NCBI GenBank assembly: GCA_030390025.1
Contig: CM059452.1
Coordinates: forward strand, 6,572,001-6,636,000
Length of the DNA stretch: 64,000 nt
Direction of reading: 5' to 3'
Origin: Squalus acanthias
Taxonomy: Eukaryota
Below the pieces are notes generated by a model. The model was not told where the DNA came from. It worked only from the letters and a program-made list of their open reading frames with translations, and did not search any database. Each line of letters begins with the position of its first letter. The stretch's first letter is position 1. Shown piece after piece: positions 123 to 30,409 of the stretch. The translations under genes and the position numbers were made by a program.

Positions 123-1200
123 ATGCGGCTCCCTGTTCTCTCTGTGGTGTGGGTGACATTCATTTTCGGTCAGAATTTTATAACTTTTAAAACGGCTTAA
201 TTCGTCGAGGAATAAAATTGAAAACCAGAGAAGTTACTTAAACTTGTGTCGAACCTTGGTTAGATCACACTTGGAGAGCTGTGCACAGTTCTGGTCTCCA
301 TAATAAAAAAAGGATATAGGGACACTGGAGCAGGTGCAAAAAATTACAAGGATGATACCAGAACTGAGAGGTTGTAACTATGGAACAAGTTGGGGCTCTT
401 TACTCTAAAAAGAGAAGACTGGGAGGTGACCTGATAGAGGTCTTCAAAATTATGAAGGTTTTTGATACGATAGACGTAGAGAAGAGGTTTCCACTTGGGG
501 GGATTCCTAAACTAGGGACCATAAATATAAGATAATCACAAATACATCCAGTAGGGAATTCAGGAGAAACGTCTTTATCCAGAGAGTGGTGAGAATGTGG
601 AACTCACTACCACAAGGAATAGTTGTAGCGAATGGCATAGAAGCATTTATGGGAAAGCTAGATAAGCACACGCGAGAGACAGGAATAGAAGGAAATGCTG
701 ATAGTGTTAGAACAAGAGTGGTGGGAGGAGGCTCGTGTGGAGTATACACACGGACATAGACTAGTTGGCCGAATGACCTATTTCTATACAGTAAATTCTA
801 TTCAATTTTATGTAAAACTCAATGCGAATTTTCACCGTCAGTTGGTTCAGTTTGAACCTTTAATGCATATTTTTCGCTTTCTTTCACCGTGTGTTCCAGA
901 TCTGAGCGATGCAGATTCTGTTACTCAGCGGGAGTCCTCACTCACACAGACAGAGGGAGAAGATGCCACTTTAACCTGCACCTATTCCGCCAATGGTTAC
1001 GTATTCTGGTACCGCCAATACCCAGGCAGACAGCCTGAGTTTGCAGTCCAGAGGTACACGAGCGGCGGTTCTGAATATCAGCCGGATTTCGCTCAAGGCC
1101 GGTTTTCTGATACAGTCCAGCGGTCAGACAAGTTGTACCGATTGACCATCTCGGGGCTGCGGCTGACTGACACCGCGGTGTATTACTGTGCACTGAGGCT
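123..1200 (+). CDS. TRAV: TCR alpha/delta V segment, intact (leader exon 123-168, V exon 900-1200)
   Basis: Leader MRLPVLSVVWVTFIF then GT donor; AG acceptor 898-899; DSVTQ..LTC..WYRQYPG..DTAVYYCALR; intron contains a CR1 fragment. Confidence 0.9.
220..810 (+). mobile_element. CR1-type LINE 3' fragment in V leader intron
   Basis: Degenerate RPHLE..QFWSP, RGDLIEVFKI and RVVRMWNSLP-like sequence. Confidence 0.75.
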
Positions 1201-1239
1201 CACAGTGATGGGAACGAGCTAAAGCCTCGTCCAATAACT
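1201..1239 (+). other. 23-RSS
   Basis: cacagtg + 23 bp + ccaataact. Confidence 0.85.
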
Positions 1240-1909
1240 GCCGCAGGTTTCTGTGTCACAGCTGCTGCCTGTTGTGGGCTGTTTATCACAGCGGGTCAGA
1301 CACTGACACGTGACTACATTCCTGTGCGCACAGACCCCGAGCAGAATCCACATCAAACTCAGATAAAACCGTTCACATCGAATACTGATTCCGTCTGATT
1401 ATTGTATTAACTGTGTGAGGTCAGCATTGGCTGCTGTTTATTTGTGTATCTTTGAGAAACTCCAGTCCCATTGAGAATAAACACACCTGCGGGTGGCCTG
1501 TATCTGGTGCACCGCTGCTTCGGATATAACGCACGGCAAAGGGACAAATAATGATTGGTTTGAAATATCAGTCTACAGTGTAGACAGAGATAGGTCGGGT
1601 GGGGAAGATCCCAATAATTCTAATAACGTTATTAAAACTTTCTCAATATTATAAAGACTTGCCCATATATAAAGTAAGAATCTGCAGTAAAAGCAGGTTC
1701 CAGAAGGTCAAATTCAGAACAGGATAAGAAGCTAATGAACAAACATTAATCGAATAATAATCTCTAAGGACGGACATGGTGTGTACTTGGCTCCGTGCCA
1801 GATAGTCAGAGGACCGGCTGAATACAAAAGACTAACTGAGAAGGTATCAGAAGAGATGAAATAGTGAGATACAAACCGTGAAATGAAAAAAAATAATTAA
1901 AGATTAAAC

Positions 1910-2290
1910 TGGACCCTGTCTCTGTTTGTATTACACTAGGCCCTGTCTCAGTTATTAATGCACGAGACCCTGTCTCTATTTATATTGCTCTAGGTCCTGT
2001 CTCAGTTATTACTGTATTAGGTCATGTCTCTTTTGTATTACACTAGGCCCTGTCTCTATTTATATTACGCTAGACCTGTCTCTTTTATTAATGCATTCGA
2101 CGATCGTTTTGTTTGCATAACACTAGGCCCCATCTCAGCTATTGCTGCACTAGACATGTCTCTGTTTATACTACACTTGGCCCTGTCTCAGTTATCACTG
2201 CACTAGACCATGTCTCTGTTTATATTACACTCGACTCTATCTCAGGTATTATGAAACTAGGTCATGCCCCTATTTATATTGCACCGTTCT
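1910..2290 (-). repeat. Degenerate 27-bp minisatellite, same family as 20950-22770 but inverted
   Basis: Repeated tagaccctgtctctgtttatattacac-like units. Confidence 0.8.
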
Positions 2291-4325
2291 ACAACACATT
2301 TTAAATACATATGCAGTGAGACAGAGAGTTTAAAGATAGTGACATTCATCAACCTGAGTGCAGCTCGGTGGCTGTGACCTCCTCTGACATAGCAGAGGTT
2401 TGTCACTCAAACCCCCTCCGCCCAATCCCGAACCCCTCACCTACCATGTAACAGCTTTCTATGTCTCTGACCCCGCCCTCCACGTGTGGGAGAGTCCAAG
2501 GTGAGTCTGTCTGTAGCTATGCCGGGGTGGGGGGCGGGGGGTGGGGTGGGTGCTGGGTGGACAGTCTTCCATGTGACTCTGTCGTGAATGGTTCCTTCCT
2601 GGGCCTGTGTGGGACCTCTCCCGCTGGGACCCATGTCTAAGAGTTGCTACCTGGGGAAAACCTTTCAACCATTGAGTACAGACAGGCACTGAGCTGATCC
2701 ACCGCGAGGGGCCTCACTCACCTGCTCAGGTACATTGCTCAGATCTTCCTTTCATTCAGTCACTTCCATTGTCCTTTTCCATCAATTTCTTTGTTTGATT
2801 TTAACCTGCTGTTTGTTTTTCTTTACCTGTCTGTTCATTTTTGCCTCTGTTTCTGATGATTTTCAACATCTGTTCTGCTCATTTCACCCCATCTCCCTCA
2901 TTCCCTTTACATTTCACAGATTCCACTCATTCCCATGTCCCCAGGTGACACCATGCATTCTGCAGTTTGTGTGTGTGTGTCTGAGCTTCAGTCAGCGTCA
3001 GTCTCTCCGGCCCTGTGTCCGTGTGAGTCACTCTACCTCAGTCAGGCTGTGTTTAATCAGCCCTCTCATTGTCCATTTGTATTACACAGAACAGTGCCGA
3101 TCCCTTTATCCCGCTGCACGGCTTCAGGGGTTATCCTCATGGCGCAATAGTCAGCACAACCCTTATTAACTGTTCCCGTTCTGTGTCTTTATATTTATAC
3201 GTCTGGATCAATCTCCCTCTGTTGGTGTCTCACTGTACTCAGTCTCACCTTTATCTATCTCCCTCTCAAAGTGTACAGACAGACCAAGAGCTGATCAATG
3301 GAGGTGGCTTCATTCACCTACACAGCTCCATTGCCTAAATGTTTAACCATGGAGGACAGACAGGCACTGGGCTGATCCACTGAGGGGTTCCTCACTCACC
3401 TGCACAAGTACATTGCTCAGATATTCCTTTCAGTCAATCACTTCTATTGTTCAATTTCAGAATTTGAACCTGCTGTTTGTGTTTCTGTTCCGTGTCTGGT
3501 TGTCCTTTCGCTCATTTCTCCCCATCACTTCCATTCCCTTCACAATCCCCAGATTTTCCCATTCCCATGTCCCCTGATGACATCGTGCAGTCTGCAGTCT
3601 CTGTGACGTCAGTCTGCAGTCACTGTGACGTCAGTCTGCAGTCTCTGTGACGTCAATCTGCACTTGCTGTAGACGGTTCCCTATTAACGTGTACAGCCAG
3701 AAGGGATCATCGGGGTCAAAGCATTAAAGATGACTGAAGTACAATTAATAATTTCTCCCATTTCTATTCTGTAAACTTGAAGAATATGTAATGTAGCATT
3801 GAGCTTCAGTCAGCGTAAGTCTCTCCCGCTCTGTGTTCGCGTGACGTCAGTCTGCAGTCCCTGTGACTCGCTGTCGGACATGTTGAAGTGATGTGCCGTC
3901 GGCCATGTTTGAGTGACGTGCCGTCGGCCATCTTTGGGTGACTTGTTTCGGCGATATTTGAGTGACGTTTCAGTGTCAGCGACCTCTTTATCGGAGCTGA
4001 TCTGAACATCGATCCATGATTTTAAGGGGAAACAGCAGATCAGAAGCAAAAAGGACAGTTTAACCGGTCGGATCATTCTCTGATCGATCTTTTGAGCCGA
4101 TTGGATTCTGTAGTTTGTTTTCTCGGCCGCTCCTGGAAACAGTTGGGTGACAGTTTGATCCGAGGTTAATTTGGTTCCTCTCGGTGTGTGTTTGAGCGCC
4201 TGACAGCGCGCTGCTCATTGTGGCTGCATCTGCCCGCGATTCTACACAACTCCAACAGAAAGGAGCTCCGCCCTACAGTCCAATGGCAGTGTTTGTACGG
4301 GGTGAGACTGCTTTCCATCACTGTG

Positions 4326-4780
4326 AGTCTCAGGGCGCAGTAATACACGGCAGCGTCAGTCAGCTGCAGCCCGGAGATGGCTTAACTGGTGAATTAATTC
4401 GAGGTCTGGAGCACAGCAGAGAAACGGATTCCGAAACCTTCTCCTCTCTGTTCCTATGTGTTCCAAGAAAGTCTCCTGATTACAAACTGGGGCTCCTTCT
4501 CTGGTTGTTGCCGGTACCAATATAAATAATAGTCGTTGGCTGTGGTACTATAGGTGCATCTTATAGTCAGCGCTTCAGCTTTTCTTCTGCTGACTGAAGT
4601 CTGGGACTGAGTAACAGAATCTCCATCACTCTGATCTGTAACATGTGTTCAGGAGCAAGATAAGACCGAGTATTAAAACCTGAAATAATATTAACACTTT
4701 AGTTTGAACACGACATGATTGGAGTCATCCTTACCGACAATAAACACCTCAAACACAACCAAGGCGCTGAATATCCGCAT
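4326..4780 (-). pseudogene. TRAV: TCR V pseudogene (leader 4735-4780, V exon about 4326-4635)
   Basis: Leader MRIFSALVVFEVFIV; DSVTQSQ..IRCTYS..WYRQQP..YYCALRL with in-frame TAG and TAA; RSS heptamer 4319-4325, nonamer acaaacact. Confidence 0.88.
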
Positions 4781-6534
4781 GGCCGCTGCCGAGCCCAAAC
4801 CTGTCGGTCTCTTGAAAAGCACAATTCCGGACCGGAATCGACCTCGTCAGAGGCTCCTATTGGTCCAACGTCATTTCCTGCTCTCATTGTCCCACTCCAA
4901 TGACACCTTCTCCAATACACCCGCCATATATTGAAATGAGATTCAAGTGAGGCTCATGCCTCAGTTGAAACCCCTTGAACCACAGTATTAAGTATCTGAA
5001 GGTGGAGCCAATCACTCAGTGAGCGCTGCCTATGGTGTGAAGAAAGTTTCAGTTTTGCTGAGGTTTGGGGATTTATTTAATGGGCCCGAATTCGTCACAC
5101 TGAGTGTTTGTTTATTTTATGTCGGTGTGTGACGGCTCACCGAGAGCGTTAACGTCCTTCTCCTGCTAACAATTTTGTTTACACTGAACTATCCGCTCTG
5201 TGCGGTAGATTTAGTCTGGTCGCTATTTCTAACGAAATAGTGAACACATTCTAAAATAAAAAGCTTGCGATTTCGTTAAAACAACTTGTGGATGAGATTT
5301 CCAGAGAGAGACCAGAGGAAATCTTCCCACTATGGGTCCCCAGCAGCTTAATCAAACCCGACTCCCCGTCAACCACCTCAGTCTGATTAGTGGCAGTGAT
5401 TGAAATAAACAACAGCTTCATCTACTTTCAAACCGATAATTTTTTGTCACTTCGAGATGATATCTGACCGCCATCATCCGACTGTGTTGGTAATTGCTCG
5501 GAGGGGAATATGAGCCCCTTCCCCAAATATCTGCTGAACACGTTAGATTAATGTCTGCCTGAAACTCACAGGAGGCGCTATTCCACTGTGCTGAAATTAA
5601 TCACATGGGAAGTGAAATGGTGGTTATTGACACGGGAGAAACTCCTCGCCCGGGTTACAGTCCCATCTCTCTGAGTGTGCCCTTCATTCCAGATTTTAAT
5701 ATGTAAGGGTTTTTTTCAAACGGCAGCTACCAAAGATGTCACTCGCAGTCGCTTTAAGATTTGCAGTATAAGGAAATACTTCATAAGCGTGGTAGAGATT
5801 GTGACGATGAATAGCTGACAATTAAAAGAGAGGGGGGAAACTTTGCTGAATCGCACGAACACAAACGCAGTAGGCTTTGAAATTATGATGCGTTTACACA
5901 AATCAGGAAGAACAATGGTTCGAGTCCCGAGGGAGCAGCGAGAACCTTGCGACCACGGCGCCCTCTGGCGGATACGACGAGACCTTTTACATTGTTCGGA
6001 TATTGGGTGAAAACAGACAATAAGTGTGTGTATGGGGCAGTTCCCAGTGTCCATTTATGGGAAGGTCTGTTGCGGTGATGCTGATGGCGAATGTCGAGCA
6101 TTGTACATCAACACTTACAGGGACAAAAACATTAATTAGATGAAGTGGAGCTTGGAAATTCACAGTTTCCGCTGGGAGATTTGACCCTTTCTGATCCGCA
6201 CAATAAACAACAACAACCCGCAATCCGCATTCATAACAACTGACTTTCATTTCCTTTCAGTTCAACTGGTGCCGGATGCCCGTGGTCATTGTTCTGTGTC
6301 TGCACTGGGGAAACCCTGATACAAGCTGCCCCACCCCCCTGCTGAGGGAGAACAAGTGAGCGAGGCGCAGAGAGGCCGCTGTCCATCTGTCTGTCAGTCA
6401 TCAGCCTGGTTACCTCAATAAAGGCATTTCGCTCATCCAGCTACATTTGTATATAAATATTATACATTTATTATTAATAAAGGTACATATGCATTATAAT
6501 GAACAGAATAAGGTCTAATCTACAAGTACGAGGG

Positions 6535-6990
6535 GGTCAGCCTTGGCTCAGTTGGTAGCACTCTCGCCTCTGAGTCAGGACATTGTGGGTTCAAGTCACA
6601 CTCCAGAGACCTGAGCACAAAATCTAGGCGCACCCTCCCGATGTCAGTACTGAGGGAGTGCTGCACTGTCGGAGGTGTCGTCTTTCGGATGAGATGTTAA
6701 ACCGAGGCCCTGTCTGACCACTCAGGAGGACGTAATGAATCCCAATATTTCGAAAAAGAGCAGAGGAGTTATCTTGGTCAATATTTATCCCTCAAGCAAC
6801 ATTAGTAAACAGATTATGTGGTCATTATCATGTTGCTGTTTGAGGGAGCTTGCTGTGCGCAAATTGGCTGCAGCGTTGCCTACATTACAACAGTGACGAC
6901 ACTTCAAAAAGTACTTCATTGGCTGTAAAGCGCTTTGGGACGTCCGCTGGTTGTGAAATGCGCTGTAGAAATGCAAATCTTTCTTTCTTT
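6535..6990 (+). mobile_element. tRNA-derived SINE with Deu-domain-like core (SacSINE1-like)
   Basis: A box tggctcagttgg, B box gggttcaagtc, core ggaggtgtcgtctttcggatgagatgttaaaccgaggccc, tail ending gaaatgcaaatctttctttc. Confidence 0.75.
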
Positions 6991-7330: not shown

Positions 7331-7637
7331 TGCGGTGTTATGACCCAGAAGTATTTCCTGGAATCCGCAGCTGTCAGCTGTGAAACCCTTAAAATGACGG
7401 CTCTGTAAGTTTGGGCCAAAGATGTGGTGAAGCGCCGTCTTGCAAAGTTCGCATCGTCACTGAACCGGTCGGTGCAGCGGATGAGGATATTCTCCGGGCC
7501 CACGGACCGACCCTCCCGGTACCAGGACAGGCAAACTCTCGCCACCTCTGTATAGGAGCTGGTTATTGTCGCGATATCTCCCTCCTGAGCGGTCACCTCT
7601 TCCATTGGCCAATGAGCGATCCATCCAATGACGCTGT
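7331..7637 (-). pseudogene. Divergent TCR V pseudogene, both canonical Cys lost, no leader found
   Basis: ..AQEGDIATITSSY..WYRE..RF..LTAADSRKYFWVITP followed by cacggtg (7324-7330) and an acaataaac-like nonamer. Confidence 0.75.
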
Positions 7638-7769
7638 CTAATGGACAGAGAGGGAAACGTTTAGATAAAGTTCCAATAACTGTGAGTAATAAATCCCAAC
7701 ACGCGGAGAGATTGTCGCTCACACAACAAAAGCGGGATAGCATTTCAGAATAGGAGTTCTCAGAGTGAC

Positions 7770-8035: not shown

Positions 8036-8198
8036 AGAAAGATACCTATATATTAGAATTAACAGCACAATGTCTAATCACAAATACAGGGACCAGCTGA
8101 GACTCGCCCCTGATCACAATGTTCCCCTGACGCGCTGACATGTTGAGCGACGCTCTGACAGTTTGTGTACAGGTCCAGCCCCGCTCCGTGTCTCTGTG

Positions 8199-8365: not shown

Positions 8366-8431
8366 GGAGCCTCTGATCTACAAAGCGGAGGGAGTTTTTG
8401 CACGACGGTTTAACGGGTTTCCATCACTGTG

Positions 8432-8979
8432 AGTCTCAGGGCACAGTAATAAACTGCAGTGTCGGTCAGCTGCAGCCCCGAGATGGTTAAACTGGTGAAT
8501 TTAGTGGAGCTGTCAAGTTGTGCTGAAAAACGGGTTTGGGCAAAATGTGCTTTATCTTCAGAACCGCTCGCGTATTTCGTCAGAATAAACTCGGGCGGTG
8601 TTCCAGGGTGTTGCCGGTACCAGTACAAATTATAGCTGCCGCTCTGTGTAGTATCATAGGTACAGTTTAAAGTCACCGCTTCTCCTTCTGTCTTAACACC
8701 TGAGGACAGTGGCTCAGTGAGAGAATCTCCAAGACTCAGATCTGAAAAACATGTTCAAACAGGAAAAGATCAGACCGGCGGGTGTTTGAAATTCAGATTA
8801 AAAACATGTTAGAAATTAGAGTAAAGATGAAATGTGTCTAATTCAGCATCATTGTCATCATTTCACCAATAACAACATCTGGGTTCCCGCAGTCAGGGGG
8901 AGAATTGATGTTTACTGGGGAGGAATTACTTACTGAGAAGTGATATAATGATGAGGAGCGGTGCGAGACGGATACACAT
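8432..8979 (-). CDS. TRAV: TCR V segment, open frame (leader 8934-8979, V exon 8432-8741)
   Basis: Leader MCIRLAPLLIIISLL/gtaagt; LNCTYD..WYRQHPG..DTAVYYCALRL; RSS heptamer 8425-8431 + 23 bp + gcaaaaact. Confidence 0.88.
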
Positions 8980-10429: not shown

Positions 10430-10763
10430 ATGCTTCGGATTTACAGAGTTTCCCTGCTGATTTACACTCTGATCTGCACGGATGTGAGCGGTGAGGATGA
10501 GGTGAAGCAGCTCCCTCGGCGGGTGGTTGTTAGTGAAGAGGGAAGCGTGTCCATCAACTGCACCACGACCTTTGTGTTTAGCGTCCTGCGCTGGTACAGA
10601 CAGCACCCGGATCAGACCCTCCAGCATCTGATGATGGCCACAAGCGGGACCGATCAACACGGGAGGATCACTGCTTCAATCGGGGGAGGCAATAAACTCA
10701 GTGCCCTGACTGTGAGAGACGCGCGAGTGACAGACAGCGCCACCTATCTCTGCGCCGTGAGCC
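10430..10763 (+). CDS. TRAV: TCR V segment with leader and V apparently in one exon
   Basis: Continuous ORF MLRIYRVSLLIYTLICTDVSG-EDEVKQ..INC..WYRQHP..DSATYLCAVS; RSS cacagtg 10764-10770 + 23 bp + acagaaatc. Confidence 0.82.
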
Positions 10764-11609
10764 CACAGTGTAACAAACAGGCGGAAAGTCCGCACAGAAA
10801 TCTGCGCGGAGGGGGAGAGCCGCTCTGCTGTGTTTGGAGCAACGGGATTGGGAGGGGCCCGGTTATAATAATCGGAGGACAGAGGGAGTGAGCACAGAAC
10901 AATTCTGATATATTGAAGAGAATGATTTAAAGAAAGTGAGAAATGAAGAGAATTGGAAACATAGACAGAGAAAAAGAAAGAGAAAACCCCAAAGAAAGAA
11001 TGAGAGAGAGAAAGAGAAAAAGCGGTGTAATAATGAGAGTGTAGAGGACAGCAAATTAGGAAAGATGGGAAAGAGAAATGAAAGAAAGTGAGAAATAACG
11101 AGTGAGAAACACAAAGCTAAAAGGTGAGAAAAGCCCTAAAGAAAGAGATTCAGAAATAAAGTAAAATGTCCTTTCTTTTAAATTCACTCACTTTTCCCTT
11201 CCCTATTTACAAAGCTGAATTGTCTGAAACAATACACATTGTCTCCCAATAACAGACCTCTGGAAACTGCCCCATCGATAAACGTACACTTTATTCTGTC
11301 CATTATCCTGACAGTGTGAAATTCTCAGAGTCACCGGCAGAGGGCGCCGTGGTCACATGATTGTTGCCGTTATCAACTGGAAATGATGGAGACAAAGCTT
11401 GCGGTAACACTGCCCGCGCCAGCCCCGCCCACAGCTTCCGTTTGCTGCTCTCGCTCTGAACCGCCTTGCCTGCCCTGTATTGGTGGAGAGATTGCTGTCG
11501 CTGTTCCCTGTTTGGCATTGGTTGTTTCAGCAGTGCAGTGCGGCGGGGATCTGTATTTCTGCTTCGACAGAGGATTTCCCGGACTAGAGAGTAACAGACT
11601 CGGAGCATC

Positions 11610-12121
11610 ATGCGGAACCGTCTCGCACCGCTCCTCATCATTATATCACTTCTCAGTAAGTAATTCCTTCCCAGTAAACATTCATTCTCCCCGTGACTGC
11701 TGGAGCCCCGGTGTTATTGTTGCTAAAATGATGATGATTATGTTGCTAGAGATGACATTGATGGTGATGGTGGTGGTGATGATGATGATGATGATGATGA
11801 CTATTATTTTGTTTTAGAATGGAGCCACCAAGACACAGTGGAACAGCCGGTCCCTGAAATGACGGTTGAAGAGGAAAGTAATGTCATACTAACCTGCACC
11901 TTGAAAACAAGCGATACTAACCCTTATGTGTACTGGTACAGTCAGCACCCCGGGAAGCCTCCACAGTACGTGCTTCGTCTTATCGGAGGGAATGTGAACC
12001 GGAACCCAGACGTTACTGACCGATTCAATTCTACGTTTAATAAAACTACCAAGATTACCGAGCTAACGATCGGCAAAGCCCTGATCTCCGACACCGCCGT
12101 GTATTTCTGTGCCATGAGCCC
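11610..12121 (+). CDS. TRAV: TCR V segment, intact (leader 11610-11655, V exon 11818-12121)
   Basis: MRNRLAPLLIIISLL/KWSHQDTVEQP..LTC..WYSQHPG..DTAVYFCAMS; cacactg 12122-12128 + 24 bp + acaaaaacc. Confidence 0.9.
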
Positions 12122-12290
12122 CACACTGCTGCAGAGATATAGCGGATCCCGTACAAAAACCCACACTGAGAGTTCCAGTTAGTGCTCACCAGAGGGCGCT
12201 CTCACACCGATATACAAGCGATAATTCAGCCTCCACAGTGAGAGTCACAGGGACCTTCTAAAAAGGGCGAGAAAGCAGAACACTCCACAA

Positions 12291-14877: not shown

Positions 14878-15317
14878 ATGTGCTCCCCGTGTTCTTTACT
14901 AATAATAATGGTCGTGCTGCCCAGTGAGTCTATGTTTAAATGGCCAGTGTGTGTTCCATGGGTTGTATTCACTGCCAGGCTTTTCACACATTCTGTATTT
15001 TGTTACAGGTACGAGTGGAAAAGACGCAGTATTTCAGGATCCGCCAGAATTAACCGCTCAGGAAGGACAGACCATAATACTGAACTGTCGTTACTCGGCA
15101 GAGTACACTGGCTCAACCCTCTTCTGGTACATCCAGTATCCCGGGGAAGCTCCGAGATATTTACTGAAGCGATATAGCTCGGTGTCCGGAGAAAAGGCTC
15201 CAGATACCCCAGAACGGTTCTCTGCTGATTTGGACCAAGACAACAAAACGGTTCCTTTAAATGTCTCCGGAGCGCTCATCTCTGACTCTGCCGTGTATTT
15301 ATGTGCGCTGAGCGCCC
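14878..15317 (+). CDS. TRAV: TCR V segment, intact (leader 14878-14923, V exon 15009-15317)
   Basis: MCSPCSLLIIMVVLP/STSGKDAVFQDP..LNC..WYIQYPG..DSAVYLCALS; cacactg 15318-15324 + 23 bp + acaaaaact. Confidence 0.92.
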
Positions 15318-15712
15318 CACACTGTTACAGGGGCGCAGTCAGTCCGTACAAAAACTAGCAAAGGACTCTCACCTCCTCTCAATGAATCAGATCTGTGACC
15401 TGGATTATGATCAGATAATAGAACGGAAACCAAATTATAAAGACGAGTTTGGCTGAATGGCCTGTTTCTGTGCTGTACACAGTGTAATTCTATGTAATAT
15501 CCCCATTTATATCGGCTGTGGGTAGTTCACATGGTCCGTGAGCAGGTGTTTTAACGGGACCCTCCGGCACTTATACTAAACAACATAACCATTTCCCTTC
15601 ACTGCTCCCAACGCACATACTGCCCCTGTTAAAGGGCGAACATTGGGTTTAATCCCCGTCCAGTTCTCTGTTGTGAGGAGAACAATTTCACTCCGTTCCC
15701 CGCTCCCCGCTC

Positions 15713-15964: not shown

Positions 15965-16488
15965 ATGTTGGGTGGGACTTTTTACTCAGTCCTCACAGCT
16001 GCAGCTCTATTAAATGGTAAGTTCACAAGTTACACAAACTTCCTCTTGCAGGTGTCACTAACATAGAGAATCTTTTAACTGTGTTTCTCTATACTTGCCA
16101 TGCATTCCGTCACCTTTATTATATTAGTTATAATTAAATGACAGTGAGAGCTTACAGTTCTGTATTTCTAAATTTCTGCAGGTGTCAGTGGTGCGGACTC
16201 GGTCTCACAGGGGCCGGTTACAGCGATGCAGTTTGAAGGAGACTCGGTGACCATCAATTGCAATTATTCGACCACTGCTACTTTCTATTTCTTACAACTG
16301 TACCGTCAGGACCGGGACAAAGGCCCCACATTCTTGATCTACATCCCTTCTGGTGGGGATGTTTCCAAAGCAGAGGGGGCGGGGGCTCGATTTTCAGCAT
16401 CTCTCGACACTTCGAAAAGTGAAGGGAAATTCACCATCGGCGGCCTGCGGCTGTCTGACAGCGCGGTGTATCACTGCGGGCTGAGAGA
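15965..16488 (+). CDS. TRAV: TCR V segment, intact (leader 15965-16016, V exon 16182-16488)
   Basis: MLGGTFYSVLTAAALLN/GVSGADSVSQGP..INCNYS..LYRQDRDKGP..DSAVYHCGLR; Leu at the conserved Trp position, also in paralog 60009; cacagtg 16489-16495 + 23 bp + acaaaaaca. Confidence 0.85.
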
Positions 16489-18018
16489 CACAGTGACAGG
16501 AACCAGAGGGAGCCTCGTACAAAAACACTGCTGGAACATAACAAGGTCAGCGGGATAGCGGGCAGTGTGGAGAGAAACGGGGACTTTCTAAACTTGTGAC
16601 CAGAAGGTGCTGATTTAAAATATACCCAAATAAACAGCAAGCAGGGAGCAACTGATAAGCATTGGGGAAACTTTCCTCTGGTGCTTCTGGGTTGAATACA
16701 TCCTGAGCATAATGAAAAGATGTGTTTAGAGAATTTATACCAGTTCATAAATTAAAGATATTGCGGCAGAAACACTGCCCAAACAATTTGACATTGTGTT
16801 CCAGCCGTTCAAGGAGCTGTACACACCAGGCAAACCCAGCGGCAGGTCTATAACACCGAGGGAACGCGCTGAATGTCTGCAGGAAATATGATCAAAAATT
16901 TGTATTTACATAAAGTCTTATTCATTGTGTTCAGATTCCCCTAAGTGCTTCTGATGTGCGGTCAAGTAATAACTGAGTTACATATTTAGACTGATTTGTT
17001 TCTGAATAAACCACCTATCATCGTTATTTTGATTAATCTAAATTTTGAAACTTGTTTTATTCGTGTTACTAGCATCACCTTATCTATCAAGCGCAGTTTA
17101 TTTCTTGGTTAAGCTCTAATTGCCAGAACACGGCGAAATTCACCTTTCTTCGTGTCATCTGGCATTTTCTTAAGAATCTGTCCCGCAGCACCGCGTGCAA
17201 TGTTTGGGCCAGCCACCAGGGGGCGGCGGGACTCCACCCTTCCGCTCAGTGAAGTCGCCGCCTTAGCTTCAGATGGAGTTTGTCAACTGAATATGAGGAA
17301 GCAGTTGGCTGCCGGAAATTATTGCAATGGAAAGGGGTTCGATCGAAACCAACTCCTGATGTGACGATCTGAAACACAGAGGAACCGTCAATTCACCAAA
17401 TTGGTACAATATTTATTTAAAAACCAAGGTGGTGACACCGAGAATTCTATATACCTTTAATGAACGACCACTGACGGTGAAGGAAGGGGAGCGGATACAA
17501 TGATCAGTGTGAGGTGATGTCGGTCACGTGTTGAATTGGTTCAGGATCATTTTTTAATTCATGTTTTTAATTCATGTGGACTTCGCTGGCAAGACTGGCA
17601 TGTACTTTCCAGTTCTACTTGCACTGATACAACTGGCGGTCTTGCTGGGCCACTTCATAAGGCAGCTAAGAGTCAACCACATTGGTGTGGGACTGGACTG
17701 GACTCACCATTTCAGGACAACGGGGGACCGGCAATAAAGGCGGCCTCGCCAGCGACACCTGCAGCCCGAGAATGAATTAACACGCCACTTCTATTTATCC
17801 AATCAAACATTGGTCTCTCTCTCTCATATATCCAATCATCGCAAGGACCGTTCACGGACGGTTCCGATTGGTTTAAACTGGAGCACGTGATTTGTCATTG
17901 AAGAATATTGCCGCGAGCTGCTCAGTGCAAAAACTGGATCAGCTTCCCAGCAAAGGAGAGAGTATTGGAAATCAGCTCGACCCGGAGAGGCCCACAGTGG
18001 CGGGGATTGTCGGAGACC

Positions 18019-19655: not shown

Positions 19656-19669
19656 CCTGAGATAAGGCC

Positions 19670-22770: not shown

Positions 22771-23559
22771 AGAGCCTGTTTAGTGGAAGAAAAACAATCG
22801 AGCTTTTGCTGCCAACTAGTGGCAAAACTTTGCCATTACTCCTATTGGGAAAATAGCAGGTCAGGCAGCATCTGTGAAGAGAGAAATATTTTCTGTTTTT
22901 CTTTCAGATTTCCAGCATCTGCAGTATTTTCTTTTTGTATTAGGGGAAAATTAAGATGTCAGTTACTGTTTCTGATATTAATGTATCAAGAAACACCTTT
23001 CATTCAAGGACCACCTCATCACATTCTACGGGAGTTCCCGAAGGATTTAAAGTGCAACTAATTGCACGTGAACGTGGCCGATTCGCGCACAGAAAGATCA
23101 GCAAAAGAGCAAAGTGGCTCGATTCCTGTTATTGTGTTTCTGTTGAACTTGGTTGAAGTGAGGAATTTTGATCCGGATACAGTCTGGGGCCCTGGGAGCT
23201 TTAATGCCCACCTCAACAGACAAGGTGCGGCGAGCGGGGAGACACTATTCCTTCAGGAAAGGTAGTTCCTTTTCAGTGCTGCACCCATTGGACGCCTAGT
23301 TAATGTGCTTAGGTTCTGAAGTTGATGTGAAGTCTACAATCTGCTGATGCTGAAACCAGAATAAAGTCACTTTAGCCAAGCTGTTACTACAATGCTTAAT
23401 GGGTTTAGGTGACATTTGCGCAAAGAAAGTTCAGCAAAACTATTTTAAAATAATACCGGTTAATATTGTTGATATTCAGCGTCCATATACTAATATCACA
23501 AATAGTAACTTCAACAATACAATTACAAAACTTTTGATTCGTGCAATTTAAATTCACTG

Positions 23560-24080
23560 AATCATGGGATCTTACAGCACAGAAGGAGGCCATTCGGCCC
23601 ATCGTGCCTGTGCCTGTTCCAGCTCTTTGAGTGAGCTATCCAATTACTTCCATTCTCCTGTTCTGTCTCCAAAGCCTTGCAAATGTTTCCTTTCAAGTAT
23701 TTATCCAATTCCCTTTTGAAAGATACTGTTGAATCTGCTTCCGCCACCCTTTCAGGCAGTGCAATCCAGATCATAACAACTCGCTGCAAAAAGAATCTCC
23801 TCATATCCCCGCTGTTTTTTTGGCAATTATCTTAATTCTGTATCCTCTGGTTACCGACACTCCTGCCAGTGGAAACATGTCTCACTGTCAATTCTATCAA
23901 ACCCTTCATGATTTTGAACACTTCTATTAAATTCCATTTAAACTTCTCTGCTCTCTTCTCCCAGCTTCTCCAGCCTCCAGTTTCTCCACATAACTGAAGT
24001 CCCTCATCCCTGGTACAATTCTAGTAAATCTCCTCTGCACCCTATCCAAGACCATGACATCCTTCCTAATGTGTGGATTG
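23560..24080 (-). mobile_element. CR1 LINE 3' fragment
   Basis: MRRFFLQRVVMIWIALPERVAEADSTVSFKRELDKYL. Confidence 0.85.
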
Positions 24081-26189
24081 AAATAAATGCAATATTTATT
24101 TCTCCTTCAGATTATGTCTAAGGGTACATGCTCTCTTAAAATTGGACTGAGCAGTAATCTGAGTATTATCAATATTGATAGCAATGATATTCCTTGTTCC
24201 GACAGTGACTTGTGGGCACAGCAACATCGGCCTCTGCAGGATTCATGTTTCAATAAGATCACTGTCGCCACCTGCTGATGAACAACATCTACTACAGGCC
24301 CCTGAGTTTATTAAACATGATTCATAATTCCGCATTTACCGAGTTACGTTCACCTAGAGGAGTTTCTCAGGCGAACCAGAAGAGGGGCAATGGATCAGGA
24401 GGAATTAAAGGCGGAATGGCTAAAATTACTGTTATAAATTCAACTTCACCTCTTCTTTGGCCAAAACCTATCGAGCGGTCAGTTCAAGGGTTCCACAGGT
24501 GACAGCCGGATATTCCAGGAAACACTTCAGTGTTTTAACACCGCACACGCTGGTGTATTTAGGGCAAGAGCCGACACATAAACTGCAGGTGTTAGGTGGC
24601 GGGAGTCTGTGACATGGTCCAATCTCACGGTGTAGTCCGAAGGAGAAGGATAACAATTCTTCCATCCACAATGTTTCCTCAATGTGTCATAAACAGACAG
24701 ATAGACAGAGAGTTGTGTCGATCATTGTGTAACCAGAGCATATTGTAATTATTGACTACAAATTGATATAATCCAGAAAGTAGCTGGAAACCCAAATCCC
24801 TTCACTCCTCCACCAGAGTGGGAGTCAAATATACTTTCTGGCAGAGAATTCCACATTCTCACCTCGCTCTGTGTAAATCATGTTTTCTAACCATAAAATG
24901 TATCTTTTGCCGCGTCATATTTACATAGAATATACAGCACAGAAACAGGCCATTCGGGCCAAGCAGTCGATGCAAAAAAGACAATCTCGATTTTGTTTAT
25001 TTCTGTATCCAATATTAATAAAGCAGTAGGAAAATAGGAACACAGGAGAAGGCCCTTCAGCCCCCCGAGACTCTTCCGCCATTCAGTTAGATCATGGCTG
25101 ATCTGTATCATAACTCCATCCACCCGCCTTGGTTCCTAACCCTTAATAGCCTTTCCTACAAACATCGACCAATCAATCTCTGGCAACAATCAGAAATGAA
25201 TGCCACTGCCTGTTAACACTTTCCAATTCTTATTAATTCCCGAGATGTGGGCACCGCTGACAAGGCCGGAATTGACTGCCCATCCGCGAGTTGCCCCTTG
25301 AGGAGGTGGTGGGGGGCCTTCTTCTTCAACCACTGCAGTTCTGCTCTTTCCAGCAGTTTCATGCAACTGAGGGGCTCGCGAGGCCACTTCAAAGGACAGT
25401 TAAGAGTCAACCAGGTTGGTGTATGACGACAGTCGTATATCGGTCAGACCAGATGAGGACGGCAGGGTTCTTTCCTCAAAGGGTCATTAGTGAACCAGTT
25501 GGGGTTTCACCACAATCCTATAGTTTCATGATCAGTCTCACTAACACCAGATTATTTATTTCCAGCTTTTAAAAATCTGAATTGAAATGCCATGATGAGA
25601 TTTTAATTGATGAATTATTAGCCCAGGCCTCGGGATTGCTAATCCAGTAACATTACCACTACACTACTGCATCCTTTTATGTTCTCTGCCTCGGCCATTC
25701 TATGTGGCAAAGTATTCCAATGCTCCAACAACCCCCTATACCGATATCTCCTGACCTCTCTCTCTCTTATTGACTATTGTAATTTGATGAAGTTTTGGTT
25801 GCAGACTCCTCAAGCAGAGGCATCAGTCTTTCCATCTTCCCTCCAGTAAAGCTCTTTTAGCAATTAAGAAAAACTCGATTCGATTCCTTACCCTTTGAAA
25901 AACACGATGAAGGCCGACAGTATTGAGCAATATTATTTGTTTAGTAATATGACGGCCCGGGAAGTACCCATTGGACCGGAAATCTCTCTCCGTCCATCTG
26001 TCGCTATTTCTGTAAGTTGGCACAGACACAGTTTGTTACTCCTGAGTGTGAGGTATTGAGCGGGAATGGGAACTGTGCACAAACCACATTAATAATCCGT
26101 CGATTATGGGAGAGCGCCTCTTATACAAGGGGGAGGGGGTCAATCAGGAACCAATCAACTCGAAGCCATTCGCGGAAAACCACATCACC

Positions 26190-26625
26190 AATCTTCTTCT
26201 TAGGTAGTCCCTCGGATGACTTGCTTCCACACTAAAAATTAGTTCTCAGGGAGGTGACTGATGAGTCCAATGCTGGACCTACAGTCTCTGTCACAGGTGG
26301 GGCAGACGGTGGTTGAAGGGGCGGGTGGGTGGGGTGCTTGGGTTGACGTGCGCTCCTTCTGCTGTTTGCGCTTGGCTTCCGTTTGCTCCCGGCGAAGAGA
26401 CTCGAAGTGTTCGGCGCCTTCCCGGATGCTTCTCCTCCACTTTGTGCGATCTTGGGCCAGGGATTCCCAGGTGTCGGTGGGGATGTTGCACTTTTTCAAG
26501 GAGGCTTTGATGGTGTCCTTGAAGCGTTTCCTCTGCCCACCTGGGGCTATTTTGCCGTGTCGGAGCACCGAGTATAGCGCTGTTTTGGGCGTCTCGTATC
26601 GGGCATGCGGACATCACCAATAACA
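26190..26625 (-). mobile_element. RTE-clade LINE 3' fragment
   Basis: LRHGKIAPGGQRKRFKDTIKASLKKCNI..WESLAQDRTKWR..CPTCDRDC..SH, typical RTE C-terminus. Confidence 0.8.
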
Positions 26626-27609
26626 CTGCAATATTATCAATTCATTTTAACTCACTTTGATGCATTAAGAAACGGTTTGAAGCTATATATTTAGACCAGA
26701 AAATGACGTGGATAAGTAATTTCCAAATATTCTTATAATGGCACCTTATTTCAGTCTTTATATCCCTATACCAGCTATCCACGAACCTAAACAAGGAGCA
26801 CAAAAAGTGCAACCTTCTGAGAAATAAGAGTTTGATTTAACCTCATGTCATAGAGAACTGAGCCTATAACCTTGTCCAAAATTGTCATTCAAATCACCAT
26901 ATTCGGCAACTTCACCGACTCAGCTCTGTCTCCATGATGTACCATGTCCACTCTAACCATATATCTCCATCACGGTGACCCCATCAACCTGAGCACATCT
27001 CAGTGATGTACTGACCTTACCCGCCCAACTGGTGAACAATTCATTCAGTGAATGAATGGGCTGAATGGAAAGGCTCTGGGGAATGCGGTTAAAGGGGTTA
27101 AGGGCATTTCAATTTGCGGCCACAATGTCCAAACCCACAGGACATATTTCACTGTGGCAATGACTTACAATGACTATATGGCGGTAAAGAAATTCACACT
27201 TCATGCTCCTTTTGTCCGTGTGTTTAGAATGGTGTGACTGCACCAGTCCCACAGAGGAGCAAGGATTTAGTTAGGGAAGGAGAAAAATTATGTACCCATT
27301 GATCTGCTATGTATCCGCATTGATTGAAGTAATTCGGGTGAGGATATATTGAGTGCTTTGTTGTACATGAAAGGGCCACATGTTCCAAATATTACACTTG
27401 TCCCTTCTCAACCCAGACATGAGCTCGCTTTATATTTCTGAGATGAAGATTCCCATCACCACAGAAGGATCATCAGTATCGCGTGGATAGCTTCAGGCTT
27501 CTCTTCGTGATGTTCAGCTGGTTAGACATGGACACTGTATGGAGTGAAATGATACAGAAAGTCAGGAAGGACTGAAGGCGCCACACTGACACAAATGTAA
27601 AGGGGCTGC

Positions 27610-27780
27610 NNNNNNNNNNNNNNNNNNNNNNNNNNNNNNNNNNNNNNNNNNNNNNNNNNNNNNNNNNNNNNNNNNNNNNNNNNNNNNNNNNNNNNNNNNN
27701 NNNNNNNNNNNNNNNNNNNNNNNNNNNNNNNNNNNNNNNNNNNNNNNNNNNNNNNNNNNNNNNNNNNNNNNNNNNNNNNN
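27610..27780. other. Assembly gap (171 N)
   Basis: Run of n. Confidence 1.
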
Positions 27781-29304
27781 TAATGTGCTGGACAGACCCT
27801 CCTGCTGACTGCTGCTACTGACAGGATGTCTGAGACGCTGGATATATTTCCTATCCTGAGAGATGGGAACAGTTACACACAGTTACACAACTAAATAATT
27901 AAAATTGACTCCAGTACTGTTGCTAGGCAGATTTGTTTATCAATAGGCCTCACTCACAATGTTAAGTGTTTGAAGTTGGCTTTCAGCCAAGCGGTCAGCA
28001 CTGAGGAAACAGACCTTTGATTCACTGCACAGAACCGCCAGATGCTTCCTGTAAATGACATTGGGTGTTCGAGCCTCACTGGCGGCAGTCGGCTGGGCTG
28101 CTGCCAAATACTGTGTGGAGCAGATTGGAGTGAATATGAATTGGGAAACAAGATGGGATTTAACTATTTGAACATTAAATTATTCAGCAGCGCTCTTACA
28201 AGAAAGAAACATTTTACATGGTATAACATCTAAAGAAAGACTTTCGGTAAATTCCTTGCTCACAATATTATAAAATAGGTTCGGAAAAATTATAGGATCC
28301 ATATACTAATTAATTAAAAATTCCAAATAAAGATAATTCGAGATAATTCAGTCGGTTTATTCAGCACTGCACGAAGTGCTGGAGAGAGATTTTAATGACT
28401 CCACACCCACACTGTAATGAGATCAGTGGGAATCGCAAAGTAAATAAAACAATCGGTGGAATTTCCTCGATCCCGCTGCACTTCCTTGAATATTCTCAGA
28501 TTAGTGAGCCTGATTGAAACTAAGGGCTCCCTTATTACTGATTAGCAGCCGCGCACTGGGCCGTTTAATTTTGCTGATTTGAATTCCTAAACAAGCCCTC
28601 TCAGAGCCCGGCTACCAAAGGTCAGAGAAATGCTCAGTTTGTGATCTGTTTCAGCGGGAGATGAAGCATTTATTCTTGTGATATTCTGTAACATACCGCT
28701 ATGTCCTGATATACTGTGTTCCTGATACCAGTGTATGTTACACAGTCGGTCGCTATTAAAGTTCGCTGCAATGATTTAGATGCGGGGGTTTGCTGATCGC
28801 ATTATCGGTTCTGATTAACCAGCTTCTCTTTACCAAAAGCTGATCTGAAGCGGGCGGGCCCCACATTCTTATGTGTCTCCGTCAACTCACTCCTTAATAT
28901 CAGGCAAGCGAATTTAGTTTAAACCTAATTTTATAAAGGACTGTCTTAGGGTCACAGACTCAGGGGCAGTTAGAGAAATGCAATGAGAGACACTTGTATA
29001 ATGTGAGGGCTTTCTACTCATCTCCGGATCCAAATCGTGTAGCAAAAGCCATCCACATTGTAAATAGAATCACATCACCCATCTCCCGCATTCAGATAAA
29101 TAGACCTAAAGCGATTCATAATATAGGGGATACTTTATTGGTACAGAATAGATAGCGGGAGATGGAGTCACACATACTGGCAGTCTCTTTAGACCCTGAT
29201 AATGTAATTTAATCTGAGAGATTCACATCTCCTGTGAAGCAGTGAGGAAATAAAGGGATTTAATTGACAGTCCAGATGTGAGTCCATTCTGTTGGTGATG
29301 TGGA

Positions 29305-29395
29305 GGGTGTGACGTGGATCCAGTAGCCGCCTCTATCAGGGAATCAATAGGCGGCGCCTGTAACCTCGCCCCCTTCTACCGGGTATTTAACGGCC
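29305..29395 (+). promoter_or_regulatory. Putative IgH V promoter (CRE-like tgacgtgg at 29310, TATA-like gtatttaa at 29383; no ATGCAAAT octamer seen)
   Basis: Motifs about 100-175 bp upstream of leader ATG 29483. Confidence 0.5.
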
Positions 29396-29482
29396 GGTCA
29401 CTGGGACCGCAATACAACAGTCCGGGAGCGGGTTTGCTCAGTGAGTTCTTGTCAGAACCATTTCCCACACATTGCCAGGAGG

Positions 29483-29970
29483 ATGAGGTCGGCGATTTCT
29501 CTCAGTCTGTTGCTGGCTTTCTTATCCGGTGAGTAGTTTTTATTGTCCAAGTCTCTCACTGTTACTGTCTCAGTGTTAGTCTCTCTCTGGAATGTTACAG
29601 AGTCAGGAATCATTTCACCAGGATTAATTCTCGGGGTCTTTGATTGTTTTTATAGGTGTCCAGTCGGATGTCGTGTTGACTCAGCCAGAGGCAGGGACCG
29701 GGAGTCCCAGAGGCTCCCTGAGACTGACCTGTAAAACCAGCGGGTTCAATCTTGGTAGCACCTACATGTACTGGGTCCGACAGGTTCCCGGACAGGGGCT
29801 GGAGTGGCTGCTTGAGTACTACAGTTCATCGAACAAGAACTACGCCCCAGGGATTAAGAGCCGATTTACTGCCTCCAAAGACACTTCAAACAACATCTTC
29901 GCTTTGGACATGAAGAACCTGAGAACCGAAGACACCGCCATCTATTACTGTGCAAGATACTACAGTGGGT
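29483..29970 (+). CDS. IGHV: IgM heavy-chain VH already joined to a D segment (leader 29483-29528; VH 29656-29957; D 29958-29970)
   Basis: [67 protein letters not shown] followed directly by tactacagtgggt (YYSG). Confidence 0.95.
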
Positions 29971-30008
29971 CACGGTGCTGTACAGAGCGAGCTCCTCATA
30001 CAAAAACC
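29971..30008 (+). other. 22-spacer RSS 3' of joined VD
   Basis: cacggtg + 22 bp + acaaaaacc. Confidence 0.92.
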
Positions 30009-30321
30009 CCAGACAGCGAGTTTGCTCACACCTGCGATCACTGCCACGGCAGGAGCGTCGAAGAAAACGAGGCTTAAATTAAAATAATGGGTAAAAGTAA
30101 CATAGATTTATAAAAATGTCTAAAAGTGTTCTGCTTTATTAGTGTTGATTGTCGTGCTAAGTCTGCACAGATGCATCAGAAGTTTTCCAATTCCCTTTAT
30201 AAAGATAATGACCAGCACAAACTGAAATATCTCACTGGTTCACTCTTAGGGGAGTCGGAATCAGGGTTTTGAGAGCGCTGTGGAATTTCATCTCTGTATT
30301 TTACAGTTAACAGTCCGCCGG

Positions 30322-30349
30322 AGTATTGGGCACGGCGAGTCTCACTGTG
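30322..30349 (-). other. 12-spacer RSS 5' of joined DJ, degenerate nonamer
   Basis: agtattggg + 12 bp + cactgtg. Confidence 0.75.
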
Positions 30350-30409
30350 GTACAGTGGATGGCGCCATGGGAGACTGGGGCCAAGGCACCATGGTGACGG
30401 TGACTGCAG
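30350..30409 (+). CDS. IGHJ: IgH D segment joined to JH (DJ)
   Basis: gtacagtggatgg runs without any RSS into AMGDWGQGTMVTVTA, followed by gtaag donor at 30410. Confidence 0.9.

What the first reader, a model, noticed from the sequence alone, without database searches (positions are those of the whole stretch)
900..30409. RSS geometry permits reciprocal TCR-Ig chimeric receptors in cis
Seen: at least five intact + strand TCR V genes with 23/24-RSS lie upstream of, and in the same orientation as, a pre-made DJH carrying a 12-RSS. The pre-joined VH-D has a 22-RSS with consensus nonamer in the same orientation as the TCR V genes. Established: 12/23 rule; TCR D-delta and J-alpha carry 5' 12-RSSs. 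Inference: (a) one deletional join could give TCR-V/DJH/Cmu, an antibody or BCR with a TCR V domain; (b) the VH-D unit behaves like one more V in the array and could join D-delta or J-alpha to make VH-bearing TCR chains with a germline-encoded CDR3 start. Germline joining makes each chimera a one-step event at this cluster.
Basis: inference. Interest (0 to 1): 0.85.

Follow-up and report, generated by a model that had tools for sequence, protein, structure and literature searches.

The report
IgM gene cluster inside shark TCR V array
A complete, partly pre-joined shark-type IgM heavy-chain gene sits among T-cell-receptor V genes whose recombination signals would formally allow hybrid antibody/TCR chains, but this layout is already published and no hybrid was seen here.

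Summary
The sequence elements are real. Five open + strand TCR alpha/delta-type V exons carry 23/24-bp-spacer RSSs at 1201, 10764, 12122, 15318 and 16489. A complete IgM minilocus spans 29483-47878. Its VH is joined in the assembled genomic sequence to D1 and keeps a 22-spacer RSS with a perfect nonamer. Its D2 is joined to JH and keeps a 12-spacer RSS with a perfect heptamer and a weak nonamer (5 of 9).

DNA-like contigs of relatives or paralogues show unjoined D1, D2 and JH on the same flanks, which confirms both joins.

The assembly gap at 27610-27780 lies between the upstream V genes and the cluster, and I could not test continuity across it. More TCR V genes (57-64 kb) lie on the cluster's gap-free side, so the interleaving does not depend on the gap.

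The 12/23 logic holds, but it applies to any shark IgM cluster with an exposed 5' D signal. Ig/TCR interleaving, VD-DJ germline joins and VH-to-TCR-delta chimeras are all in print. No TCR D, J or C lies in the window. Two RNA-like runs (contigs only, low power) showed ordinary VH-J-Cmu joints and no chimera.

The scan noted the same idea on other DNA of this genome (s1-888242, s1-889956, s1-889813).

Verdict: a real, ordinary instance of a known architecture carrying an untested hypothesis.

The parts
900..1239 (+). TCR alpha/delta-type V exon (900-1200, ends ..YYCALR) plus 23-RSS (1201-1239). The leader is unclear.
8393..8979 (-). Intact - strand TCR V: leader 8979-8930, V exon about 8734-8432, 23-RSS 8431-8393.
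10430..10802 (+). TCR V read from ATG 10430 without a leader intron to 10763 (..YLCAVS), plus 23-RSS.
11610..12161 (+). TCR V: leader 11610-11655, V exon 11818-12121 (..YFCAMS), 24-RSS with perfect nonamer.
14878..15356 (+). TCR V: leader 14878-14923 (donor GTGAGT), V exon 15009-15317 (..YLCALSA), 23-RSS.
15965..16527 (+). TCR V: leader 15965-16016 (donor GTAAGT), V exon 16182-16488 (..YHCGLR; Leu at the Trp41 place), 23-RSS.
27610..27780 (.). Assembly gap of 171 N between the upstream TCR V genes and the IgM cluster. Not filled.
29483..29528 (+). IgM VH leader exon.
   Evidence: spliced joint 29528>29656 in RNA-like run X1
29656..29970 (+). VH exon (to 29957, ..YYCAR) joined to D1 (29958-29970).
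   Evidence: An unjoined D1 with its own 12-RSS is seen before 29958 in X15 and X17.
29971..30008 (+). D1 3' RSS: CACGGTG, 22-nt spacer, ACAAAAACC.
30322..30349 (+). D2 5' RSS: nonamer AGTATTGGG (5/9), 12-nt spacer, heptamer CACTGTG.
   Evidence: Unchanged in X15/X17 contigs that run on into an unjoined D2.
30350..30409 (+). Joined D2-JH (..GDWGQGTMVTVTA), splice donor after 30409.
   Evidence: The loose end at 30409 in X2 equals the first 30 letters of the Cmu1 exon.
38396..38696 (+). Cmu1 exon.
40103..40420 (+). Cmu2 exon (acceptor position approximate).
42752..43059 (+). Cmu3 exon.
43578..43970 (+). Cmu4 exon with secretory tail and stop.
47601..47878 (+). Membrane exons: TM1 (about 47601-47729) and TM2 (about 47870-47878).
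57068..57430 (+). Downstream TCR V (coding ends 57390; frame open from 57068) plus 24-RSS. Same gap-free stretch as the IgM cluster.
58888..59257 (+). Downstream TCR V (coding ends 59218) plus 23-RSS.
59970..60539 (-). Downstream - strand TCR V: leader 60539-60488, V exon 60315-60009, 23-RSS 60008-59970. It is the only V on the gap-free side that could reach the DJH by inversion.
61829..62160 (+). Downstream TCR V (coding ends 62121, ..YYCAVR) plus 23-RSS with perfect nonamer.

Best explanation
The window is a piece of a cartilaginous-fish antigen-receptor complex. A complete IgM heavy-chain minilocus lies interleaved with TCR alpha/delta-type V gene segments. The minilocus has a leader, VH joined to D1, D2 joined to JH, Cmu1-4 and two membrane exons.

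The cluster is of the known, partly germline-joined VD-DJ type. Its one remaining recombination step is the join between the D1 3' 22-RSS and the D2 5' 12-RSS, whose near ends lie 334 bp apart. That step most likely stays inside the cluster.

The neighbouring TCR V genes most likely serve TCR alpha/delta rearrangement to D, J and C segments outside this window.

The signals would formally allow a TCR V to join the DJH, or the VH-D1 unit to join a TCR D-delta. These are inferred possibilities, not observations. If they occur, the TCR-V-to-DJH direction is expected to be a rare by-product, mainly in thymocytes, where both kinds of segment are open to RAG. It is not expected to be a designed one-step route to a receptor.

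Shown here: the elements, their order, the two pre-made joins and the splice sites. Inferred: which segments actually pair.
For: - All IgM exons are open with AG/GT borders. Spacing is 380 bp from VD to DJ and 8.0 kb from J to Cmu1. The figure 1 legend of PMC2435157 gives about 400 bp and 6.3-6.8 kb for nurse shark clusters.
- Both joins are confirmed by DNA-like contigs (X15, X17). These carry the same flanks but an unjoined D1 behind a 12-RSS, an unjoined D2 followed by a heptamer, and an unjoined JH behind a heptamer (table 7).
- RNA-like runs X1 and X2 show the leader intron spliced (29528>29656) and the J donor spliced to letters that equal the first 30 letters of the window's Cmu1 exon.
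- TCR V genes lie on both sides of the cluster, and the same V families occur on both sides.
- VH scores as Ig heavy V. V15317 aligns end to end with TCR alpha V chains, among other V domains.
- In print: IgH clusters linked to TCR alpha/delta, with TCR-alpha/delta-type V exons between IgH clusters (PMC12227049, section 6); VD-DJ germline-joined clusters (PMC5192425, passage); rearrangement only within a minilocus (PMC2435157, abstract).
Against: - No read or contig evidence bears on which RSS pairs are used in this animal. Contigs drop rare forms.
- Expression of this exact VH copy was not shown. At 29709 all 22 X1 contigs and all 12 X2 contigs carry another letter, and likewise at 29695 (table 3).
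- Malecek 2008 also reports partial IgH rearrangement in nearly every thymocyte. So RAG does reach IgH signals in cells that are rearranging TCR genes, which leaves room for cross-joins.
- The assignment of the V genes to TCR alpha/delta rests on their V-end motifs (CAL/CAM/CAV), the 23-RSS, the lack of an adjacent J-C, and PDB matches in which Ig light-chain V domains score similarly.
Confidence: 0.75

Rival explanations
1. TCR V segments next to the cluster really do rearrange to the pre-made DJH and give TCR-V/Cmu heavy chains. The VH-D1 unit really is used as an extra V by TCR delta or alpha. Together these would be a two-way Ig/TCR chimera system in cis.
For: Compatible spacers and orientation. 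The VH-D1 RSS has a perfect nonamer. IgH signals are cut in thymocytes (PMC2435157, abstract and discussion). Ig V joined to TCR D-J-C is reported in nurse shark (PMC5931798 discussion; PMC12227049).
Against: There were 0 chimeric joints or loose ends among those listed for two RNA-like runs (low power). No V-J joint enters the DJ before 30364 or leaves the V after 29960, so even this cluster's own VD-to-DJ join was not seen. The 12-RSS nonamer is weak (5/9). The in-cluster partner is about 40 times closer. Rearrangement is reported only within a minilocus in B cells. No Ig transcripts are reported in thymus (PMC2435157). Four paper searches turned up no paper, by title or abstract start, on a TCR V joined to an Ig constant region in sharks.
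Confidence: 0.08
2. The cis link between the five upstream V genes and the IgM cluster is a scaffolding artefact. The gap joins two pieces in the wrong order or orientation.
For: A 171-N gap sits exactly between them. Its flanks share nothing that bridges it. The region is repeat-rich and paralogous.
Against: TCR V genes of the same families lie on the gap-free side of the cluster too. First readers' unchecked notes report IgM clusters beside TCR V arrays in several other windows of this genome. Published maps of four other elasmobranchs show the same interleaving (PMC12227049, section 6).
Confidence: 0.1
3. The VH-D1 and D2-JH joins are somatic, from lymphocyte DNA that entered the assembly, and not germline.
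For: Partial VD-DJ rearrangements are common in shark thymocytes (PMC2435157). Unjoined copies with near-identical flanks exist in DNA-like runs.
Against: An assembly consensus reflects the majority of cells. Germline VD-DJ clusters are a known class (PMC5192425). The V-D1 join has no added letters.
Confidence: 0.05

Closest known systems
Elasmobranch antigen-receptor complex: IgH miniclusters linked to and interleaved with TCR alpha/delta (Flajnik et al. 2025, PMC12227049)
   Same: An IgM cluster kept as a unit, with TCR-alpha/delta-type V exons between IgH clusters. The authors discuss closeness as favouring VH-to-TCR-delta transrearrangement (sections 6 and 15, read).
   Different: That paper maps four named species at gene-model level. 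Its coordinates are in table S1, a supplement I could not open. In the sections and passages I read it discusses neither RSS spacers at single clusters nor a TCR-V-to-IgH join. Whether this species and this cluster are in its table is unknown to me.
Partly germline-joined shark and skate IgM clusters (VD-J, VD-DJ, VDJ), as reviewed in PMC5192425
   Same: V joined to D1, D2 joined to J, and one signal pair left. The cluster is otherwise complete.
   Different: None in kind. Here both joins are backed by unjoined copies seen in DNA-like contigs. Expression of this copy is not shown.
Ig VH used by TCR delta: nurse shark IgM/IgW V trans-rearrangements and TAILV, and VH-delta of frogs, birds, coelacanth and monotremes
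   Same: A VH with a 23-type RSS near TCR alpha/delta V genes could join a D-delta 12-RSS.
   Different: In the known cases the transcripts were found. Here none was seen, the donor would be a VH-D1 unit using the D1 3' signal, and the TCR D, J and C are outside the window. The primary papers (Criscitiello 2010, Deiss 2019, Ott 2021) are not held. I know them only through citing papers.
Aberrant inter-locus V(D)J joins in mammals (for example VH to J-alpha in inv(14) T-cell tumours). Recalled; no call.
   Same: RAG joining across Ig and TCR loci wherever 12/23 pairing allows.
   Different: Those are rare pathological events between loci megabases apart. Here the segments are 14-30 kb apart in the normal genome.

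Membership tests
Cartilaginous-fish IgM heavy-chain minilocus, VD-DJ germline-joined type | Leader, VH, D1, D2 and JH within about 1 kb, followed some kb later by Cmu1-4 and membrane exons, all open. | tested here: met
   VH matches Ig heavy V domains
Cartilaginous-fish IgM heavy-chain minilocus, VD-DJ germline-joined type | V fused to D1 and D2 fused to J, with only the D1 3' and D2 5' signals left. | tested here: met
   Unjoined D1, D2 and J on the same flanks in X15/X17 contigs. RSS scan.
Cartilaginous-fish IgM heavy-chain minilocus, VD-DJ germline-joined type | The joined state is germline, that is, present in non-lymphoid DNA. | not testable with these tools
   Only the assembly consensus is available. 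The tissue of origin is unknown.
TCR alpha/delta V gene segments | V-set domain with Cys23, Trp41 and Cys104, a leader, and a 3' 23-spacer RSS abutting the codons after Cys104. | tested here: met
   Exceptions: V16488 and V60009 have Leu at the Trp41 place, and the V1200 leader is unclear.
TCR alpha/delta V gene segments | Closer to TCR alpha/delta V than to Ig light or heavy V. | tested here: inconclusive
   One search tested one of the five + strand V genes. TCR alpha V chains align end to end, but Ig light-chain V parts of scFvs score as well. The CAL/CAM/CAV ends and the lack of an adjacent J-C favour TCR.
TCR alpha/delta V gene segments | Found rearranged to TCR J-alpha or D-delta/J-delta and spliced to C-alpha or C-delta. 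| not tested
   No TCR D, J or C in the window. The read-laying run was used on the Ig stretch.
Ig/TCR chimeric receptor chains (VH on TCR delta, or the proposed TCR V on Cmu) | Transcripts or DNA joints that link a segment of one receptor type to a J and C of the other. | tested here: not met
   0 of 9 V-J joint rows (15 contigs) and 0 of 12 listed X1/X2 loose-end rows show a non-VH partner. Contigs only, 20 loose-end rows over the four runs not shown, tissues unknown. This is a weak negative.
Ig/TCR chimeric receptor chains (VH on TCR delta, or the proposed TCR V on Cmu) | 12/23-compatible signals in an orientation that leaves the coding joint on the chromosome. | tested here: met
   Deletional for the five upstream + strand V genes if the scaffold is right. 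Inversional for the - strand V at 60009 on the gap-free side.

The most novel reading that the evidence does not exclude
In this shark, TCR alpha/delta V segments that flank VD-DJ-type IgM clusters are used at a low but regular rate with the pre-made DJH. They would give heavy chains with a TCR-type V domain on Cmu. This would be the mirror image of VH-delta, and would make the Ig/TCR boundary two-way at the DNA level.
Probability: 0.07. Interest if true: 0.8.

Novelty: new member of a known kind. Interest (0 to 1): 0.3.

Why it matters
If TCR V domains were shown on IgM constant regions, antibodies and T-cell receptors in the oldest jawed vertebrates would share V genes in both directions, not only VH to TCR delta. 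That would bear on how the two systems separated.

As it stands, the window adds one well-resolved example of the published Ig/TCR interleaving. It gives exact signal sequences and a concrete, cheap test: Cmu1-primed long-read cDNA. It does not add a new phenomenon.

Tried and rejected
**Hunt for chimeric proteins.** I searched the Cmu1 exon alone (100 aa) in the 5.8-billion-protein collection. It gave 1 candidate, 73% identical, labelled as a Salmonella partial protein and evidently a contaminant. That collection holds almost no shark proteins, so I did not spend the other two searches. Exons were searched one at a time and the joined step was left out.

**Gap continuity.** BLAST of the flanks (25600-27609 and 27781-29400) against the window gave one 48-nt match only. 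Continuity cannot be judged from the window.

**TCR D or J in the window.** A scan for [F/W]GxG plus a phase-1 donor behind a heptamer and nonamer found only the DJH. The other three places reported have a stop or no credible signal.

**Membrane exon by a published primer** (from the PMC2435157 text): 0 matches at up to 3 mismatches. TM1 was then found from open frames.

**Ig octamer near the VH promoter:** the only exact match in the window is at 6971, not near the VH. I did not pursue it.

**PDB search to separate TCR alpha/delta V from Ig light V**: not decisive.

**Scan notes for the place of TCR C, D and J in this genome**: none found.

**Papers.** Criscitiello 2010, Ott 2021 and Deiss 2019 are not held. 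Supplements are closed, so table S1 of PMC12227049 was not seen. It may list this very locus.

**Rejected reading: the V genes are Ig light-chain V genes.** They have no adjacent J-C, they have 23-RSSs, and they end in CAL/CAM/CAV.

Full report
**What is in the window.**

The 64-kb window has one N run, 27610-27780 (171 letters). Upstream of it lie V-type exons, each ending at a heptamer. Five on the + strand are open up to the signal: coding ends at 1200, 10763, 12121, 15317 and 16488. Their signals have 23- or 24-nt spacers, heptamers matching 6-7 of 7 and nonamers matching 6-9 of 9.

Leader exons with good donors and matching phase are present for V12121, V15317 and V16488. V10763 reads from an ATG without an intron. 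V1200 has no convincing separate leader: only an in-frame ATG at 863, or weak donors. V16488 has Leu where the conserved Trp41 stands.

On the - strand upstream there is one intact V (8432), one with stops (4326), one without the second Cys (7331) and one fragment (8199).

RSS-like sites with 22-24-nt spacers number 24 in the window, against 4.8 +/- 2.3 in 100 Markov shuffles.

**The Ig cluster.**

From 29483 to 47878 there is a complete IgM heavy-chain minilocus:

- leader 29483-29528
- VH exon 29656-29957, ending ..YYCAR
- 13 further letters (29958-29970)
- CACGGTG, a 22-nt spacer and the perfect nonamer ACAAAAACC (29971-30008)
- 313 bp of spacer DNA
- nonamer AGTATTGGG, a 12-nt spacer and heptamer CACTGTG (30322-30349)
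- a 60-nt coding unit ending ..GDWGQGTMVTVTA with a splice donor (30350-30409)
- Cmu1 (38396-38696), Cmu2, Cmu3, Cmu4 with secretory tail, and two membrane exons, all open with AG/GT borders

The VH matches Ig heavy-chain V domains in the PDB.

A join of 29970 to 30350 without trimming would be in frame: 1 + 2 letters, making a Cys codon (read).

**Are the two joins real?**

Yes. I laid four runs on 29300-30800. X15 and X17 cover introns and spacers evenly and look like DNA of relatives or paralogous clusters, at 95-99% identity. Their contigs show three things:

- Before 29958, a 12-RSS ending in CACTGTG plus one G. It is followed by the same 13 letters and the same 3' flank out to 30041. This is an unjoined D1.
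- A match through 30349 that then runs into a different 12-letter D2, followed by a heptamer.
- Before 30374, a heptamer followed by an unjoined JH.

So 29958-29970 is D1 fused to VH with no added letters, and 30350-30409 is D2 fused to JH.

No other letters are listed between 30256 and 30433 in those runs. So the 12-RSS at 30322-30349 is the ordinary D2 5' signal. This matters because the signal is weak by score alone: nonamer 5 of 9, and sites of that quality number 2 in the window against 0.7 expected.

**The gap, tested first.**

No exon or signal spans it. The last upstream V ends at 16488 and the Ig leader starts at 29483. The flanks share no colinear repeat with the rest of the window (one 48-nt match). 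My single read-laying run did not cover the gap. So the order and orientation of the five upstream V genes relative to the cluster rest on the scaffold alone.

The interleaving itself does not depend on the gap. On the gap-free side, TCR V genes follow the cluster: + strand coding ends at 57390, 59218 and 62121, and a - strand V at 60009. They belong to the same V families as the upstream ones.

On that side, only the - strand V at 60009 could reach the DJH while leaving the coding joint on the chromosome, and it would do so by inversion. The + strand V genes downstream would leave their coding joint on an excised circle. This is inference from signal orientation.

**Does the geometry permit chimeras?**

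Formally yes. A 23/24-RSS V upstream in the same orientation and the 12-RSS of the DJH are a legal pair. The VH-D1 unit carries a V-like 22-RSS. Three qualifications apply.

- The pairing is not a product of germline joining. Any unjoined cluster exposes a 5' 12-RSS on D1 (seen) and on D2.
- The in-cluster partner lies 334 bp (RSS to RSS) from the 12-RSS. The nearest TCR V signal is about 13.9 kb away plus the gap.
- No TCR D, J or C segment is in the window. The DJH is the only J-like unit found. So the cis claim for the VH-to-TCR direction cannot be judged here. The scan's notes gave no position for those segments.

**Expression evidence.**

X1 and X2 behave as RNA. Depth is confined to exons. 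The leader intron is spliced (29528>29656). The J donor at 30409 runs on into 30 letters identical to the start of the window's Cmu1 exon.

There are 9 V-J joint rows (15 contigs), with 12-40 letters between the two sides. All leave the V at 29954-29960 and enter the J at 30364 (2 rows), 30374 (5), 30376 (1) or 30377 (1). None runs through D1 to 29970 and none enters at 30350-30363. So not even this cluster's own VD-to-DJ join is visible.

At 29695 and 29709 every RNA contig carries another letter than the window (for example 22 of 22 in X1 and 12 of 12 in X2 at 29709). The transcripts seen therefore come from paralogues or from other animals.

Of the 12 listed loose-end rows for X1 and X2, none lies at the D1 end or the DJ start. 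Twenty further rows over the four runs were not shown.

This is a weak negative. Logan contigs drop rare forms, and the tissues are unknown to me.

**Literature.**

- Flajnik et al. [quoted passage not shown] They state that TCR-alpha/delta-type V exons lie between IgH clusters, and that the closeness supports VH-to-TCR-delta transrearrangement. Their coordinates are in a supplement I could not open.
- PMC5192425 (passage) lists VD-J, VD-DJ and VDJ germline-joined clusters.
- Malecek et al. 2008 (PMC2435157; abstract and passages) report rearrangement only within a minilocus, partial IgH rearrangement in nearly all thymocytes, and no Ig transcripts in thymus.
- PMC5931798 (discussion passage) restates Ig-V/TCR D-J-C chimeras from Criscitiello 2010.
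- Criscitiello 2010, Ott 2021 and Deiss 2019 are not held.
- Searches listed no paper that, by its title or the start of its abstract, reports a TCR V joined to an Ig constant region in sharks. That is as far as my statement that it is not in print goes.

**Verdict.**

The elements are real and well resolved. They form one more instance of a published architecture (an Ig cluster among TCR alpha/delta V genes) and of a known cluster type (VD-DJ). One direction of the proposed chimerism is already known in sharks. The other is an untested idea that follows from the 12/23 rule for nearly every cluster in this genome. The scan had already noted it on other windows (s1-888242, s1-889956, s1-889813).

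I put the chance that TCR-V/Cmu chains occur at a regular, detectable level at about 0.07. It would be of high interest if shown. The finding as it stands scores about 0.3.

Noticed in passing
window 44888-45822: A 52-bp satellite, 17.9 copies at 96% identity, sits between Cmu4 and the first membrane exon of the IgM cluster. CA-rich low-complexity DNA follows at about 46000-46900.
   Followed up: partly
window 57329-57444 compared with 12060-12175 and 15256-15371: The V ending at 57390 is a mosaic. Its body is like the V15317 family. Its last roughly 85 letters, with the whole 24-RSS and flank, are identical to V12121. This suggests gene conversion or unequal exchange between V families on the two sides of the IgM cluster.
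   Followed up: partly
window 16182-16488 (+) and 60009-60315 (-): A V family with Leu in place of the conserved Trp41 (..LQLYRQ..) is kept open in two copies, one on each side of the cluster, about 85% identical over 885 nt.
   Followed up: no
window 7331-7650 (-) and about 24300-24545 (+): Two relics of a V family lack the second Cys (..YFWVITP / ..HFSVLTP). They have similar heptamers (CACGGTG, CACGCTG) and related spacers. The second copy is full of stops.
   Followed up: no
window 29970/30350: A join of the VH-D1 end to the D2-JH start without trimming or additions would be in frame and would create a Cys codon at the junction (read).
   Followed up: no
window 52210-54828 (-), also 54920-56827 (+): A long open reverse-transcriptase-type LINE ORF (872 aa), with further LINE pieces beside it, lies between the IgM cluster and the downstream TCR V genes.
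   Followed up: no
protein P0001: The only database match to Cmu1 (73% identity, 132 aa) is filed as a partial hypothetical protein of Salmonella enterica on a 480-nt contig. It is most likely fish or shark contamination of a bacterial assembly.
   Followed up: no
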